From assembly GCF_001194135.2 (NCBI RefSeq), contig NC_068991.1, forward strand, positions 30,984,968-31,028,704: 43,737 bases of DNA, given 5' to 3'. Made by a program: the position numbers and the translations under genes. Below are positions 11,523-31,540 of this stretch, one piece after another. Positions within the stretch are counted from its first letter, which is position 1; each line of letters starts with the position of its first letter. Under the pieces are notes generated by a model that was not told where the DNA came from, ran no database searches, and saw only the letters and a program-made list of their open reading frames with translations. The stretch comes from Octopus bimaculoides (taxonomy: Eukaryota).

Positions 11523-11978
11523 AGTATATATAAAATATCTCATGTTAAAATCTATTTAACGCAGCAATATAGACGCCTAGTCATATGTATAATGAAATAT
11601 ATATACACAAACATTAAGTACCAAAACCCGACATGCGTTAACGTTTCTGATAACTGTGTGGAGAGAGCTATTCGTCGTATCAGACCGTCATCAGAAGCAA
11701 CTCTCAATCTGATTGCGGATAAAATAAAATGTAAAAACAGAAAAAAGAAATTTTGATGCCAAATTTTAAAACTGGAATTCTTTCTTTAATGCTATTATAC
11801 ATTCCTATCTGATTGTAATTAAAGCAGACTTTTCGGTTCATTTTTTCCGGATAATATGAAACTTTTTTTATATACAGAGTGAGTCAGAGAGTAGCCCTAG
11901 TGAATTAATCATGGTCGATGGCGTCCCTCCTTCTACCTTGATAAAACATGCACCCATTAAGAGCCTTAATACTTTATA

Positions 11979-13130
11979 CAGGGGTTATACAAAATAATGG
12001 AAACACCTTACAATTTCAAACAAATCTATTCTTGTAGTGAAGATGGTGGGGGATATTAACTCCTTACTTGTCTTCTAAAATGCACCATAAATGTTCAATA
12101 ATATTGAGATCTGGGGACTGTGGTGGCCAGAAAAGATGTTCAACTTCACTAGAATGTTCTTTGTGCCATTCAGTAACAACTTTAGCTGTGTGAATTGGTG
12201 CTTTATCATCCTGAAAGATTGCGTTTCCCTCCGGAAGCAGTTCCGCAAGCATAGGCTGAATTTGATCAAATAAAATGCTTAAATAGTCTTGACTATTAAT
12301 TATGCCATGAGGGGAAAACAATGGGCCAGCGGATTTCCAAGATATAGCCCACCAGATCATCACAGATCCTCCTCCATGTTTAACAGCTGGAAGAAAGCAG
12401 TCTGGGTCAAATGCTTCTTTTGGCTGTCTCCACACGTATACTTGGTTGGTGGTTGGAAATAAAGTAAAGGATGACTCGTCCAAGAAAATAACATTCTTCC
12501 ACTGCTCTAGGGACTACTTCTGTAGGTTTTTACTCCACTCTAAACGCTTTGCAATGTTTGTTTTTGAAAGTAGTGGTTTTCTGATTGCAGCCCTCCCGTG
12601 AAATTCCAGCTTTTTGCAGCTCCCAGCTCCCGGCGAACAGTTTTTGTGGAAACTGGGTTCTCGGAGTGGTCATTAAGCTCTGCAATAATTTTGGGAGCTG
12701 TACTTTTGTGATCCCTTCTAACAATTCGCGTAAGATTCCGACGGTCTCTGTCTGAAAGTTTTGGTTTTCTTCTGGAGTTTTGTTTCGACACGGAGATATT
12801 TCCCTCTTTCTTAATAGCTGACATTACTTTCGAGACAGTACTTCTTGTTACACCAAACATTTCGGCTATTTTTGTTAGGCTAGCGCCTGCCATATTATTC
12901 CCGACAGTTTGACCTCTTTGAGAGTTCGACAGATCTGTCATTTCAATGAATTTTAATTGCTTTTTTCTGATGATATCTGAAAAGAAACAGCAATTTTAAC
13001 AAAACATATTAAGCAACACTAATATTAAATCAAAACAACATAAAAATAAACAAGCTTTTGATGGTTTTATAGATATCTCAGAATTATTATGCTATGATGC
13101 TAGGTATTTCCATCATTTTGTCCAACCCTG
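11979..13130 (-). mobile_element. Tc1-family DNA transposon with DD36E spacing (Incomer-like), frameshifted transposase
   Basis: TA|CAGGGGTTATACAAAATAATGGAAACACC at the left and GGTATTTCCATCATTTTGTCCAACCCTG|TA at the right form imperfect ~30-bp TIRs with a TA duplication. ORF pieces: 12941-12540 (paired-like HTH, GASLTKIAEMFGVTRSTVSKV) and 12483-12064 (DES..KHGGGSVMIW..FQDDKAPIH..WPPQSPDLNIIEHLW). I count 36 residues between the second D and the E. Confidence 0.93.
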
Positions 13131-22673: not shown

Positions 22674-23201
22674 AACTATTCTATGAATGGGATCAGTATC
22701 AAATTAAATAACAAACTTAATAACTCGGCTGAGCTTTTGCTCATATATTTATTGTATCAGACATTGAAACACAACGACTTATATAGCTTTTAACCTGACA
22801 GCAAACAGGTTCGAAACCTACAGACCGTCGCTCATTTGTCAAGCTGTAAGAAATGAATAAATAAATTAGTTAATCTAGGATAAATAAATTATATTAAGTT
22901 AGTGGGAATGTTTTGGGAATACAAAATCTCAAATATATTTGAGATTTCCAATTTGACAGTACACAGGTTCGAAACCCAATATCAGTTTTACTCTCTCATC
23001 GAATGGTTGTTCGGGTTCAGTATTAGGAATAAAAAGCTTTCTTCAAAATTAATATGACACATGGACAATTCTTATGTAATTGTCAAGATCCGCGGTTCTA
23101 ATCTCAACATAAACTAGTGATGTATCTTGGGATAAAACGTTAAAGCTTATATAGGTAAAACTGTAGTTAAAGATAAGATCAATCCCAGACATACAAAATG
23201 A

Positions 23202-23476
23202 TACATTATTTACATTTGACGGATATTTGTCCTCATCTTGTTTGTTGTTAACACAACCTTTCGGCTGATATACTCTCCAGCCTTCTTCAGATGTCCTGTG
23301 GAAATTTCGAACCTGAGTTCTCATTCCTAAGGTATTTTTCGATGTTATTATTATTATTATTATTATTAATAGTATCCAGGTCACTGCCTGGAATTGAATT
23401 CGGAACCTTGGGGTTAGTAACCCGCGCTCTTAACCACTACGCCACTTGCCGTGGGCAATTATGGAGTGAATTTCAG
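23202..23476 (-). mobile_element. Inverted pseudo-LTR of a Penelope-like element (family B: tRNA-like head, (AAT)n, hammerhead-like motif)
   Basis: Reverse complement of 23687-23899, including about 30 nt upstream of the tRNA-like head (ctgaaattcactccataattgcccacgg). Confidence 0.8.
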
Positions 23477-23686
23477 AGTATAGCTGTACGGAAAAACAGA
23501 AGCCACCTCCCCCTGTGGGATGAAGTTAAAATAACAGACAGAGAACACCACTGGAAAATTCGAAAACTAAAAGAAGTAGCACATATGCTACGACATAATA
23601 ACCTCCTAAGCAGACCTAGAGCAGATATGAATAGCATAGGAGAACTGGTATTAAGGAAGGGTAGGAGAATATTAGATTTATAAGCC
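23477..23686 (+). mobile_element. Penelope-like GIY-YIG C-terminal coding fragment
   Basis: SHLPLWDEVKITDREHHWKIRKLKEVAHMLRHNNLLSRP, stop at 23681-23683; fits the PLE C-terminal pattern H..W..V.I...E..W..RK.KE. Confidence 0.75.
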
Positions 23687-23930
23687 CTAAAATTCACTCC
23701 AGAATTGCCCACGGGCATATGGCGTAGTAGTTAAGAGCGCGGGCTACTAACCCCAAAATTCCGAGTTCGAAAATACCTTAGGAATGAGAACCCAGGTTCG
23801 AAATTTCCCCTGAAGAAGGCTGGAGCGTATGTCATCTGAAACGTTGCGTTATCAACAAACAAGATGAGGACAAATATCCGTCAAATTGTAAATAATGTAC
23901 ATAATTCCTCATCTCTCAAATATATAACTG
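23687..23930 (+). mobile_element. Direct 3' pseudo-LTR of the same element (family B module with internal deletion)
   Basis: tggcgtagtagttaagagcgcgggctactaacccc..gagttcga (A/B boxes), then ctgaagaaggctg..gaaacgtt, then the tail gacaaatatccgtcaaattgtaaataatgta. Confidence 0.8.
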
Positions 23931-24130
23931 CATTATGTAAAACGATCAAAGGAAATTTAGGGGACAGCGCATGCGGGAAAGGAGGAAAAATAGAGTAATT
24001 AGGGTAAATTATACTGTGTAACGCAATTTTTGTCCTTGGGTGGCAACTGTAATTTCCTATTTGCTTACCCTTAGAAAGTATGAAAAATAGCTAACATTTC
24101 CTTCAAATTTTGCTTTTATTACATTTATTC

Positions 24131-30751: not shown

Positions 30752-30996
30752 TACGTTCTTAGGACTGGTTATCCGGTTTCCATGCCAAAGATTACTATAG
30801 GCTCCTAAAAGGGACGCCAGTCTGTCGTATGCTTACTCATTTACAGCTGAGTGAACTGGAGACCATAAAATAAAGTGTTTTGTTCAAGAACACAACGCAC
30901 AGCCTTGTGCGGGAATCGAAACCACCGCCTTGTCTAGGAATCGAAACCACGATTTTGAGATTGCGCGAGCAACACCCTAACCTAACGCCTCACTCG
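30752..30996 (-). mobile_element. tRNA-headed SINE family E with tandemly duplicated B-box segment
   Basis: Minus strand: tRNA-like head, ggtttcgattcc twice, then gcgttgtgttcttgaacaaaacacttt..cactcagctgtaaatgagta..gactggcgtcc. Confidence 0.7.
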
Positions 30997-31253: not shown

Positions 31254-31540
31254 GGGCATAAGGCGTAGTGGACTACTAATCCCAAGATTCCGAGTTGATT
31301 CCAGGCAGCGACCTGACTAATGATGATGATGATGATGTGATGATGATGATGATGATAACATCGAAAATTACCTTAGGAATGAGAACCTAGGTTCGAAATT
31401 TCCCCAAGACACCTGATGAAGGCTGGAGGGTTTATCAACCGAANNNNNNNNNNGATGAAGGCTGGAGGGTTTATCAACCGAAACGTTGTGTTAACAACAA
31501 ACAAGATGCGGACAAATATCCGTCGAATGTAAATAATGTA
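31254..31540 (+). mobile_element. Solo family B element (tRNA-like head + (GAT)n + hammerhead-like motif + tail)
   Basis: Homologous to 23202-23460 and 23710-23899 but begins at the tRNA-like head, with no PLE coding sequence attached. Confidence 0.85.
31408..31492 (+). ncRNA. Minimal type I hammerhead ribozyme-like motif (PLE type), spanning a 10-N gap with duplicated flanks
   Basis: GACAC-CUGAUGA-A-GGCUG(loop)CAACC-GAAA-C-GUU-GUGUU: conserved core, stem II with one mismatch (perfect GGCUG/CAGCC in the 23250-23295 copy), palindromic ACGU helix III, stem I GACAC/GUGUU. Confidence 0.65.

What the first reader, a model, noticed from the sequence alone, without database searches (positions are those of the whole stretch)
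23202..23930. Penelope fragment whose direct and inverted terminal repeats contain a tRNA-like Pol III head and a hammerhead motif
Seen: the order is [module, minus] - GIY-YIG C-terminal coding fragment (plus) - [module, plus]. The inverted copy includes about 30 nt of PLE 3' UTR upstream of the tRNA-like head (ctgaaattcactccataattgcccacgg versus ctaaaattcactccagaattgcccacgg), so these are not two independent SINE insertions. Each module has an A box (tggcgtagtggtta), a CT-ACT-AA anticodon-like loop, a B box, a second ggttcgaaa motif and CUGANGA..GAAA. Established: truncated PLEs often carry an inverted pseudo-LTR at the 5' end, and PLE pLTRs carry minimal hammerheads. Inference: this PLE lineage has a tRNA-derived promoter built into its pLTR, giving a Pol III start plus ribozyme cassette. 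I do not know of this combination being described.
Basis: partly seen in the sequence, partly recalled or inferred. Interest (0 to 1): 0.85.

Follow-up and report, generated by a model that had tools for sequence, protein, structure and literature searches.

The report
Octopus Penelope element with tRNA-headed repeat
This is a dead, truncated copy of an octopus Penelope-like retrotransposon whose terminal repeat contains a tRNA-derived segment with RNA polymerase III promoter boxes followed by a minimal hammerhead ribozyme; the same layout recurs in a whole subgroup of these elements and probably explains how they give rise to short SINE-like copies.

Summary
Window 23202-23934 is one 5'-truncated Penelope-like element (PLE) insertion in the head-to-head form typical of PLEs. 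A minus arm (23202-23476) and a plus arm (23477-23934) both begin at the element's 3' terminus and meet in the middle. The 207-nt coding piece is the C-terminal end of a PLE RT/GIY-YIG ORF. The shared module runs leader, tRNA-derived head with an A box (B box decayed), microsatellite, body, PLE-type minimal hammerhead, tail.

The head is not a chance SINE hit. It lies at the same place, between the ORF stop and the hammerhead, in every related PLE 3' end I recovered (Octopus vulgaris and several marine metagenome assemblies, about 63-90% RT identity). Two more distant PLEs (53% and 46%) go from the stop straight to the hammerhead.

Across lineages the A and B boxes and the hammerhead are conserved, but the tRNA cloverleaf is not. 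That fits a Pol III promoter rather than an RNA structure. A solo copy at 31254-31540 starts at the head. Pol III activity and ribozyme cleavage are inferred, not shown, and all three window hammerheads carry disabling mutations.

Closest known are the schistosome Sm-alpha SINEs. This is a new variant of a known kind.

The parts
23191..23201 (.). Candidate left target-site duplication (ATACAAAATGA)
   Evidence: Matches ATGTAAAACGA at 23934-23944 in 8 of 11 positions (read). Tentative.
23202..23254 (-). Minus arm: post-hammerhead tail ending at the short RT-start terminus (...GTAAATAATGTA)
   Evidence: W_c3 has exactly the same terminus; L002_dir ends at a near-identical one at the same alignment position.
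23255..23290 (-). Minus arm: minimal hammerhead, CUGAAGA-A-GGCUG..CAGCC-GAAAG-GUU. Decayed: C15.2->G, and position 2.1 is U.
23300..23333 (-). Minus arm: body with the second box-B-like motif GGTTCGAAATTTCC
   Evidence: Conserved island with 0.73 between-lineage identity; coordinates.
23343..23372 (-). Minus arm: internal (AAT)n microsatellite of the module
   Evidence: Also present in W_c3, L002_dir and L002_min.
23376..23448 (-). Minus arm: tRNA-derived head. A box 23434-23444, decayed B box 23390-23403, hairpin CCAGGCAGTGACCTGG 23376-23391.
   Evidence: nhmmer head model, E 4e-15.
23449..23476 (-). Minus arm: 28-nt leader, the PLE 3'UTR between the stop codon and the head. The inner end of the arm is at 23476.
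   Evidence: I5. The leader is conserved in L001, L002, L003, L006 and L007.
23477..23683 (+). Plus arm: last 68 codons plus stop of the PLE ORF (C-terminal end of the GIY-YIG endonuclease region)
23687..23714 (+). Plus arm: 28-nt leader
23713..23774 (+). Plus arm: tRNA-derived head. A box TGGCGTAGTAG at 23720-23730. The B box is truncated by a ~55-nt deletion whose junction is at 23761-23774.
23775..23808 (+). Plus arm: body with GGTTCGAAATTTCC
23810..23845 (+). Plus arm: minimal hammerhead, decayed. Helix II 3' strand reads CATCT; the helix I 5' strand was lost in an 8-nt deletion.
23846..23899 (+). Plus arm: AC-rich post-hammerhead tail up to the short terminus
23900..23934 (+). Plus arm: optional ~35-nt PLE 'tail' extension (CATAATTCCTCATCTCTCAAATATATAAC...), which is the start of the element's 5'UTR in tandem copies
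   Evidence: The same extension occurs in L002_min, L003_inv, L005, L006a and L006b, and is absent from six other copies. It continues into the 5'UTR in L007 and L008.
31254..31540 (+). Solo SINE-like copy of the module. It starts at the head (GGGCATAAGGCGTAGTGG) directly after (ATT)n and ends at the short terminus. There is no leader and no ORF. A 10-N assembly gap at 31444-31453 lies inside its hammerhead.

Best explanation
Window 23202-23934 is one old, dead, 5'-truncated insertion of a canonical (C-terminal GIY-YIG) Penelope-like retrotransposon of an octopus.

Structure. It has the head-to-head form usual for PLEs. Two cDNA copies of the element's 3' part start at the RT start site(s) at the outer ends (23202 and 23899/23934) and meet at 23476/23477. 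The left copy reached 28 nt beyond the head. The right copy reached 207 nt into the ORF.

The repeated module is the element's pLTR/3'UTR. In order: leader; a ~75-nt tRNA-derived segment that keeps Pol III A and B boxes at tRNA spacing; (AAT)n; a body with a second B-like box; a PLE-type minimal (helix-III-less, dimer-type) hammerhead; then a ~55-nt tail holding the RT start, with an optional ~35-nt extension.

The tRNA-derived segment was acquired once, between the ORF stop and the hammerhead, in the ancestor of a PLE subclade, and has been inherited with the element since.

Inferred mechanism. The A and B boxes recruit TFIIIC/Pol III. Short transcripts start a few nt upstream of the head and run through the hammerhead and RT-start region. 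The PLE RT/EN copies these in trans, which yields SINE-like solo copies such as 31254-31540. Full-length transcripts remain the template for autonomous copies.

Shown: anatomy, homology, the phylogenetic pattern, conservation of the boxes and of the hammerhead helices, and the two alternative 3' termini.
Inferred: Pol III transcription, ribozyme activity, mobilisation in trans.
For: PLE identity.

Head position. The head lies directly after the ORF stop in every related PLE 3' end recovered: the window, L001, L002, L003, L004, L005, L006 (two), L007, L008, L010, L011 and L013. L008 is a collapsed tandem unit, which puts the head upstream of the next ATG. The more distant PLEs L009 (53% RT identity) and L012 (46%) have stop, 40-110 nt, min-HHR, with no boxes.

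Conservation. Between-lineage identity peaks at the A box (0.74), B box (0.66), second B-like motif (0.73), hammerhead (0.75-0.81) and tail (0.67-0.70), against 0.2-0.45 elsewhere. The invariant columns of the head alignment fall in the A and B boxes. Cloverleaf pairs are not kept: 49.6% paired, against 32-54% for slid controls. The best-preserved head (L011) gets Rfam tRNA at 17.7 bits, E 0.84, with a CUUUGGA anticodon-type loop.

Hammerhead. It meets the four hallmarks of PLE min-HHRs in PMC4209133: an unpaired nt between positions 9 and 10.1, G10.1-C11.1, a palindromic ACGU at 15.1-16.1 (C15.2/G16.2) without helix III, and covariation. 85.8% of cells are paired against 17-42% when slid. The U-A/C-G swap is 5:5 at one helix II pair. 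Intact copies in L002, L003, L004 and L007 pass a strict descriptor that hit 0 of 300 shuffles of the window. Rfam Hammerhead_1 aligns weakly at the same place in L010 (12.3 bits).

PLE-specific 3' signature. There are two termini ~35 nt apart, with the extension present at only one end of an insertion. This matches the 'tail' of PMC8557442 and the two adjacent RT start sites downstream of the HHR, plus cleavage and extension of both DNA strands, reported in PMC11167929.

Solo 5' ends. W_c3 starts at GGGCAT. The L002 minus copy starts at CACGGGCAT, and its inverted piece at GGCAT. All lie within -4..+1 of the head start, 7-11 nt upstream of the A box. These solo copies sit in (ATT)n, and ATT is the preferred PLE EN site in PMC11167929.

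T runs. Only one T4+ run occurs in 12 copies, at a terminus, against ~7 expected (weak).
Against: There is no direct evidence of Pol III transcription.

ARAGORN never calls the head, and the Rfam tRNA model is below threshold everywhere.

A single A-box match in 43.7 kb is not itself significant (expected 0.35).

Only three solo 5' ends from two loci were available, and flanking microsatellites blur them.

The T-run depletion is largely explained by low T content and by related copies.

If the RNA motif that binds the PLE protein lies downstream of the RT start, as in the anole element (PMC11167929), solo copies could not propagate further.

Hammerhead cleavage would separate the head from the RT-start tail. 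Templates for head-to-tail solo copies must therefore be uncleaved.

All three window copies are mutated.
Confidence: 0.65

Rival explanations
1. Frozen passenger. A tRNA or tRNA-SINE cDNA was captured once between the ORF and the hammerhead, for example by template switching, and is carried along with no present function. ORF-less copies are simply 5'-truncated PLE insertions.
For: Outgroup PLEs work without the head. Octopus genomes are full of other tRNA-derived SINE heads that could be captured (PMC13282606 reports 11.6% SINEs). The cloverleaf is decayed. Individual copies lose the B box. PLE insertions are commonly 5'-truncated (PMC8557442).
Against: The head is retained at the same position across lineages whose ORFs differ by 30-40%. 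Conservation peaks specifically at the A and B boxes, while the rest of the head and the body have diverged beyond alignment. The three solo 5' ends cluster at the head start.
Confidence: 0.25
2. The head acts as an RNA structure. Either it is a tRNA-like fold cut by RNase P/Z to process PLE transcripts alongside the hammerhead, or it is a handle for the RT.
For: It sits between the ORF and the ribozyme in a transcript that needs processing. tRNA-like elements serve as processing signals in other systems (general knowledge).
Against: D, anticodon and T stems are not maintained: 49.6% of cells are paired, no better than slid controls or shuffles, with no excess covariation. There are no ARAGORN calls and no Rfam tRNA hit above threshold. 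No acceptor stem is evident.
Confidence: 0.07
3. Two independent SINE insertions, or one SINE insertion followed by a local inversion, flank an unrelated fragment.
For: A solo SINE-like copy of the same module exists 7.5 kb away.
Against: The arms share the 28-nt non-SINE leader. The middle is PLE coding sequence in the orientation of the plus arm. The identical ORF-leader-head junction occurs at more than ten other loci in several genomes. The same inverted/direct layout recurs in L002, L003, L004, L006 and L007.
Confidence: 0.02

Closest known systems
Canonical EN+ Penelope-like elements (Penelope/Poseidon type) with min-HHR in the pLTR (Cervera & de la Pena 2014, PMC4209133; Craig et al. 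2021, PMC8557442; Frangieh et al. 2024, PMC11167929)
   Same: Single RT plus C-terminal GIY-YIG-type ORF. Tandem/pLTR organisation. An inverted 5'-truncated copy next to the direct one. An optional 30-40-bp tail at one end. A helix-III-less hammerhead with a bulged nt before helix II. An RT start a short way downstream of the hammerhead. Insertion into AT-rich/ATT sequence.
   Different: A ~75-90-nt tRNA-derived segment with A and B boxes lies between the ORF stop and the hammerhead. The PLE papers read here do not mention a tRNA-derived segment or Pol III boxes in a PLE pLTR (Craig et al. mention tRNA only in connection with selenocysteine). Two related but more distant PLEs examined here lack it.
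Schistosome Sm-alpha / Sj-alpha SINE-like retroposons (Ferbeyre et al. 1998; Laha et al. 2000; as summarised in PMC2770079 and PMC6765202)
   Same: A short retroposon combining a tRNA-derived Pol III head with a hammerhead ribozyme. tRNAscan-SE classes Sm-alpha heads as tRNA-Gln-TTG-like, and the best-preserved head here (L011) has a UUG-type anticodon loop.
   Different: Sm-alpha carries a canonical type I hammerhead that sequence searches with the Rfam hammerhead motif recover (a blastn search in PMC2770079), and it is described as a stand-alone or tandem SINE with no autonomous partner attached. Here the cassette is physically part of the autonomous PLE, and the hammerhead is the PLE minimal type. 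Sequence homology to Sm-alpha was not tested because no Sm-alpha sequence was on hand.
tRNA-derived SINEs that share a 3' tail with their LINE partner (SINE2/tRNA class)
   Same: A head with A and B boxes, a variable body, and a 3' end identical to that of the autonomous element. Solo copies start at the head.
   Different: The partner is a PLE, not a LINE. The whole SINE, head included, is contained within the partner's own 3'UTR/pLTR instead of sharing only the tail.
Animal non-LTR retrozymes (hammerhead-bearing tandem repeats, proposed as non-autonomous PLE derivatives; bioRxiv 10.64898/2026.07.22.740005)
   Same: Non-autonomous sequences related to PLE pLTRs and carrying hammerheads.
   Different: Retrozymes are tandem, circular-RNA-forming units with canonical type I hammerheads and no tRNA head. 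The copies here are dispersed, and a head-bearing one occurs singly.

Membership tests
Penelope-like element (EN+) | RT domain with PLE motifs in the same ORF | tested here: met
   Not in the window itself, which is 5'-truncated. The window fragment aligns to the C-terminus of P0060. P0060 has RVT_1 (1.2e-11) and, by eye, the DKG, YVDD and GIY-YIG-type motifs.
Penelope-like element (EN+) | C-terminal GIY-YIG endonuclease | tested here: inconclusive
   The Pfam GIY-YIG model does not hit the fragment, P0001 or the P0060 C-terminus. The motif CIYSIPCSCGKVYKGETCR...EEHRK is visible. A 48%-identical relative (P0135) has PF01541 precomputed.
Penelope-like element (EN+) | pLTRs from partial tandem arrangement | tested here: met
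   The ends of the L008 contig overlap, giving a ~2.67-kb tandem unit. The L007 5' copy runs from mid-hammerhead through the tail into the 5'UTR and ATG.
Penelope-like element (EN+) | An inverted 5'-truncated copy adjoining the direct copy | tested here: met
   Seen in the window, L002, L003 and L004, L006 and L007.
Penelope-like element (EN+) | Optional 30-40-bp tail at one end (two RT start sites) | tested here: met
   A ~35-nt extension is present in 6 of 12 aligned copies, and on the plus arm only in the window.
PLE minimal hammerhead (min-HHR) | CUGANGA and GAAA cores, an unpaired nt between 9 and 10.1, G10.1-C11.1, palindromic 15.2/16.2 without helix III, and a 3-5-bp helix I | tested here: met
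   Family consensus: ACAC-CUGAWGA-A-GGCYGG..(U)CRGCC-GAAAC-GUU|GUGU. The strict descriptor hits 6 related copies and 0 of 300 shuffles. The three window copies fail it through point mutations or deletions.
PLE minimal hammerhead (min-HHR) | Helices supported by covariation | tested here: met
   85.8% of cells are paired against 17-42% when slid. There are 3 pairs with changes on both sides, including CG:5 / UA:5 at 19-34. The sample is small (12 related sequences).
PLE minimal hammerhead (min-HHR) | Self-cleavage at GUH | not testable with these tools
   Needs in vitro transcription of dimeric constructs, with and without PLE protein.
Rfam Hammerhead_1 (RF00163) | Score at or above the gathering threshold (34 bits) | tested here: not met
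   No hit in the window. The best is 12.3 bits, in L010, with a zero-length helix III.
tRNA-derived SINE (SINE2/tRNA) | Internal A and B boxes at tRNA-like spacing | tested here: met
   The A box matches 9-11 of 11 consensus positions in all lineages. The B box matches 10-11 of 11 in L008, L010 and L011. Spacing is 42-43 nt, or ~62 nt in lineages with a long extra arm. In the window, the A box is intact on the minus arm and the B boxes are decayed or deleted.
tRNA-derived SINE (SINE2/tRNA) | Recognisable descent from a tRNA | tested here: inconclusive
   Rfam tRNA reaches 17.7 bits, E 0.84, in L011 only. ARAGORN finds none, and at relaxed thresholds gives only noise. The cloverleaf is not kept.
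tRNA-derived SINE (SINE2/tRNA) | Dispersed copies that begin at the head and share the partner's 3' end | tested here: inconclusive
   One clean solo copy (window 31254-31540) and one complex solo copy (L002 ~11800-12125). Their three 5' ends cluster at the head start, and their 3' ends are the PLE termini. The sample is too small for statistics.
tRNA-derived SINE (SINE2/tRNA) | Transcription by Pol III | not testable with these tools
   Only indirect evidence: box conservation and a weak depletion of T4+ runs.
Sm-alpha/Sj-alpha | Sequence homology to the schistosome elements | not tested
The resemblance is architectural (PMC2770079, PMC6765202).

The most novel reading that the evidence does not exclude
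A subclade of Penelope-like elements carries its own SINE generator. A tRNA-derived Pol III promoter built into the pLTR, just upstream of the hammerhead and RT start site, lets every PLE copy shed short Pol III transcripts that the PLE enzyme retrotransposes. This would be the first concrete PLE-SINE partnership. It would also suggest that tRNA-headed, hammerhead-bearing SINEs such as schistosome Sm-alpha arose from PLE pLTRs in the same way.
Probability: 0.4. Interest if true: 0.75.

Novelty: new variant of a known kind. Interest (0 to 1): 0.62.

Why it matters
PLEs are the least understood class of eukaryotic retrotransposons. How they are transcribed, what the hammerhead does and whether they have non-autonomous dependants are all open questions.

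A PLE lineage whose pLTR contains conserved Pol III boxes next to the ribozyme gives a testable promoter and defines transcript ends. It also offers a direct route from an autonomous PLE to SINE-like copies.

It could explain part of the very large pool of unclassified SINEs in octopus genomes (893 recently active unclassified SINE families in O. vulgaris, PMC13282606). It also provides a candidate origin for the long-known but orphan Sm-alpha type of ribozyme-bearing SINE.

Tried and rejected
- Rfam at gathering threshold on the whole window, and at E<=10 on the region and on single heads, gave no tRNA or hammerhead hit in the window. L003 and L007 also gave none. This is because the hammerhead lacks helix III and the head has lost its stems, so it is not evidence of absence.
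- ARAGORN found nothing at default thresholds. At 70-80% thresholds it gave only inconsistent calls on both strands, which I discarded as noise.
- Pfam on the 68-aa fragment, P0001 and the P0060 C-terminus gave no GIY-YIG hit. Identity rests on homology to RT-containing ORFs.
- The T-run depletion test for Pol III goes in the expected direction but is too weak to count.
- A tRNA cloverleaf imposed on the head alignment was not supported. This lowered the RNA-structure rival.
- One scan of JGI metagenome contigs with the hammerhead pattern gave a single locus, L011. It was useful for the head but gave no census of solo copies.
- The first protein search with the 68-aa fragment gave one hit only. 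Re-querying with P0001 and with the L003 RT was needed.
- Literature searches for a PLE-SINE partnership or a tRNA-like element in PLEs found nothing relevant. Ferbeyre 1998 and Lunse 2016 were not available.
- I did not build a full-length consensus of the element, because it was not needed for the question.
Full report
**What is in the window**

The window is eukaryotic: 34% G+C, twelve N gaps and many microsatellites. Between 23202 and 23934 there is a long interrupted inverted repeat. Four colinear arm pairs (77 nt at 91%, 39 nt at 97%, 55 nt at 87%, 28 nt at 93% complementary) join into a minus arm at 23202-23476 and a plus arm starting at 23687.

The 210 nt between the arms is an open frame on the plus strand that ends at TAA 23681-23683. 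Its product is SIAVRKN..LPLWDEVKITDREHHWKIRKLKEVAHML..ILDL.
- It is 77% identical (E 1.3e-23) to the C-terminus of P0001, whose N-terminal part shows the PLE-type GIY-YIG motif.
- It is 62% identical (E 3e-22) to residues 524-578 of the 582-aa protein P0060. P0060 has an RVT_1 domain and, by eye, DKG, YVDD and GIY-YIG-type motifs.

So 23477-23683 is the last 68 codons of a Penelope-like element ORF. The closest named relative of this ORF tail is an Octopus vulgaris protein (P0002), so the host is an octopus or a close relative.

**Anatomy of the repeated module**

Read 5' to 3' on its own strand (coordinates), the module consists of:
- a 28-nt leader that directly follows the stop codon;
- a head beginning GGGCATATGGCGTAGTGG, with an A box that is a perfect TRGCNNAGTGG on the minus arm;
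- a degenerate B box and a small hairpin;
- an (AAT)n run;
- a body with a second B-like motif, GGTTCGAAATTTCC;
- CUGAAGA-A-GGCUG...CAGCC-GAAAC-GUU;
- an AC-rich tail ending ...CCGTCAAATGTAAATAATGTA.

The plus arm has lost ~55 nt (half of the B box, the hairpin and the microsatellite) and 8 nt in front of the hammerhead. It carries an extra ~35 nt (23900-23934) beyond the terminus where the minus arm stops.

A third copy at 31254-31540 begins at the head immediately after an (ATT)n tract. It has no leader and no ORF, and it ends at the short terminus.

**Is the head part of the PLE?**

Protein searches with P0001 and with an RT ORF from L003 and contig look-ups gave twelve further loci. At every related PLE 3' end recovered, the ORF stop is followed by the leader and the head:
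- L001 and L002, the same lineage as the window, with L002 from the O. vulgaris chromosome record OX597819.1;
- L003 to L007, from two ENA assemblies, about 65-70% identical in the EN region;
- L008 and L013, from TARA metagenomes;
- L010;
- L011, the only hit of a hammerhead pattern in JGI metagenomes.

L007 is a near full-length element. L008 is a contig whose ends overlap, i.e. a collapsed tandem unit of ~2.67 kb. Its order is ORF, stop, head, hammerhead, tail, 5'UTR, ATG, so the head lies in the pLTR upstream of the next ORF.

Two more distant PLEs go from the stop through 40-110 nt of unrelated sequence to the same kind of hammerhead, with no A or B box: L009 (53% RT identity) and L012 (46%). 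The simplest reading is a single acquisition of a tRNA-derived piece in the ancestor of one PLE subclade.

**The hammerhead**

Rfam does not report it in the window. The family consensus nevertheless has each feature that Cervera and de la Pena (PMC4209133) list for PLE minimal hammerheads:
- the two core boxes;
- one unpaired nucleotide between A9 and G10.1;
- a G10.1-C11.1 pair;
- no helix III, but a palindromic ACGU at 15.1-16.1;
- a short helix I (ACAC/GUGU).

On 12 copies, 85.8% of cells pair, against 17-42% when partners are slid. Helix II shows a clean U-A to C-G swap between lineages (5:5), and helix I shows a C-G to U-A change in L005.

A strict descriptor finds intact motifs in L002, L003, L004 and L007, and none in 300 shuffles of the window. 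In L010 the Rfam type I model aligns weakly (12.3 bits) at exactly this place, with an empty helix III.

All three window copies fail the strict descriptor. The minus arm has C15.2 to G. The plus arm has a decayed helix II and a deleted helix I strand. The solo copy has a C-A mismatch and an assembly gap. They are relics.

**The head: tRNA-derived, but conserved as boxes and not as a fold**

ARAGORN never calls it. The Rfam tRNA model reaches only 17.7 bits (E 0.84) on the best-preserved version, in L011, where the anticodon-type loop reads CUUUGGA.

In an alignment of nine heads, the invariant columns are those of the A box (TGG..A..GG) and B box (C..TTC.A). Between the octopus lineages, identity peaks at the A box, B box, second B-like motif, hammerhead and tail, and falls to 0.2-0.45 in between.

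The cloverleaf pairs, taken from the Rfam alignment of L011, are paired in only 49.6% of cells. That is no better than slid controls or shuffles.

Conservation of DNA boxes at tRNA spacing (42-43 nt) without conservation of stems argues for a Pol III promoter role. It argues against an RNase P/Z-type RNA structure.

**PLE insertion signatures**

Copies end at one of two termini ~35 nt apart. The extension is present at only one end of an insertion, and it equals the start of the 5'UTR in tandem copies. This is the 'tail' described for PLEs (PMC8557442). It is explained by two adjacent internal RT start sites downstream of the hammerhead (PMC11167929).

The same work showed that the PLE protein cleaves and extends both DNA strands. 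That accounts for the head-to-head arms here and in L002, L003, L004, L006 and L007.

The solo copies lie in (ATT)n, and ATT was the preferred cleavage motif in that study. A possible 11-bp target duplication flanks the window element (23191-23201 and 23934-23944, 8 of 11 positions).

**How it most likely works**

Shown:
- the anatomy and the homology;
- the phylogenetic pattern of head presence;
- conservation of the boxes and of the ribozyme helices;
- the two alternative termini.

Inferred:
- The boxes recruit Pol III.
- Transcripts start a few nucleotides upstream of the head. The three solo 5' ends available lie at -4 to +1 of the head start, 7-11 nt before the A box.
- These transcripts run through the hammerhead and RT-start region and are copied in trans by the PLE enzyme, giving SINE-like solo copies.

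A T4+ run, the Pol III terminator, occurs only once in 12 copies, but this test is weak.

Two difficulties remain. Ribozyme cleavage would detach the head from the RT-start tail, so templates of complete solo copies must be uncleaved. This is compatible with the low monomer activity of min-HHRs and with the finding that uncleaved RNA is the main substrate in vitro (PMC4209133, PMC11167929). Also, if the protein-binding RNA motif lies downstream of the RT start, solo copies would be dead ends produced only from PLE-resident heads.

**Comparison with what is known**

The element is a member of the canonical EN+ PLEs with min-HHRs. The novelty is the tRNA-derived, box-bearing segment inside the pLTR.

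A tRNA-derived Pol III head combined with a hammerhead is known from the schistosome Sm-alpha/Sj-alpha SINE-like elements, whose heads tRNAscan-SE classes as tRNA-Gln-TTG-like (PMC2770079, PMC6765202). There it is a stand-alone SINE with a canonical hammerhead and no identified autonomous partner.

The PLE papers read (PMC4209133, PMC8557442, PMC11167929, bioRxiv 10.64898/2026.07.22.740005), a recent octopus repeat annotation (PMC13282606) and four literature searches mention no tRNA or Pol III element in a PLE pLTR and no PLE-dependent SINE. Repbase and Dfam could not be consulted.

I rate it a new variant of a known kind.

**Verdict**

The Pol III function is plausible (about even odds) but untested. 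The copies in this window are decayed relics.

Noticed in passing
L008 2488-2514, L010 4799-4825, L011 821-847: In the three non-octopus lineages, a hairpin GGUCCUUCUCAGG(A/G)CCA followed by ACC/CAC sits ~5-10 nt upstream of the hammerhead. It weakly matches the Rfam histone 3' stem-loop model (11.5, 19.9 and 22.7 bits; gathering score 34). The stem shows a U-A to U-G change. It is absent from the octopus lineages, and its meaning is unknown.
   Followed up: partly
window 31444-31453: A 10-N gap inside the solo copy's hammerhead is flanked by the same 29 nt on both sides (GATGAAGGCTGGAGGGTTTATCAACCGAA). This is an unmerged assembly join rather than a real duplication.
   Followed up: yes
window 12064-12941 (-): Remnant of a Tc1/mariner-type DNA transposon: two adjacent ORFs with DDE_3 (7.9e-12) and HTH_Tnp_Tc3_2 (9e-07) Pfam hits.
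   Followed up: yes
window 35525-35764, continuing after the 981-N gap to 36826: An ORF fragment (..IEAINALAIPVVTYSF..RKIRKLLTMHRMHHPKADIERLYLPRKEGGRGL) that, from memory, resembles the C-terminal part of non-LTR retrotransposon ORF2 proteins. There was no Pfam hit. It is preceded by (AAT)n.
   Followed up: partly
window 22796-22818 and 22954-22976: Two copies, 158 nt apart, of TGACAG(C/T)A(A/C)ACAGGTTCGAAACC. Each holds a perfect B-box consensus. They lie just upstream of the PLE insertion and may be fragments of another tRNA-derived repeat.
   Followed up: no
window 30900-30990 (-): Another tRNA-SINE-like stretch with two B-box-like motifs (GTTTCGATTCC at 30912 and 30937, minus strand). It lies ~270 nt upstream of the (ATT)n that precedes the solo copy.
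   Followed up: no
L002 4792-4850, 6117-6175, 13701-13746: A different tRNA-derived SINE head (AATGGCCCAGTGGTTAGGGCAGCGGACTCGCGG...GGTTTCGATTCCC) occurs three times in 20 kb of O. vulgaris sequence. This shows that many unrelated tRNA-headed SINE families coexist in the same genome.
   Followed up: no
L007 3235-3330: The body of this lineage holds several tandem units of the form GTTCCC(G/A)AGTTCGA(A/C)AAGTAA. These are repeated B-box-like motifs (AGTTCGAA) between the head and the hammerhead.
   Followed up: no
L002 ~11800-12125 (-): The solo copy in O. vulgaris has, at its 5' end, an inverted piece of the head abutting the direct head start (caggtcactgcctggaat..cccgcgctcttaaccgctatgcc|cacgggcatatggc). 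It is a miniature of the head-to-head layout, embedded in long (ATT)n/(GTT)n tracts.
   Followed up: partly
L011 300-375 and 465-485: Further tRNA-like sequence (GGAGTGGTGGCGTAGTTTGTTAAGGCGCG...GGGTTCGATCCCCAC) and a partial repeat of its start lie upstream of the truncated PLE in the JGI metagenome contig.
   Followed up: no
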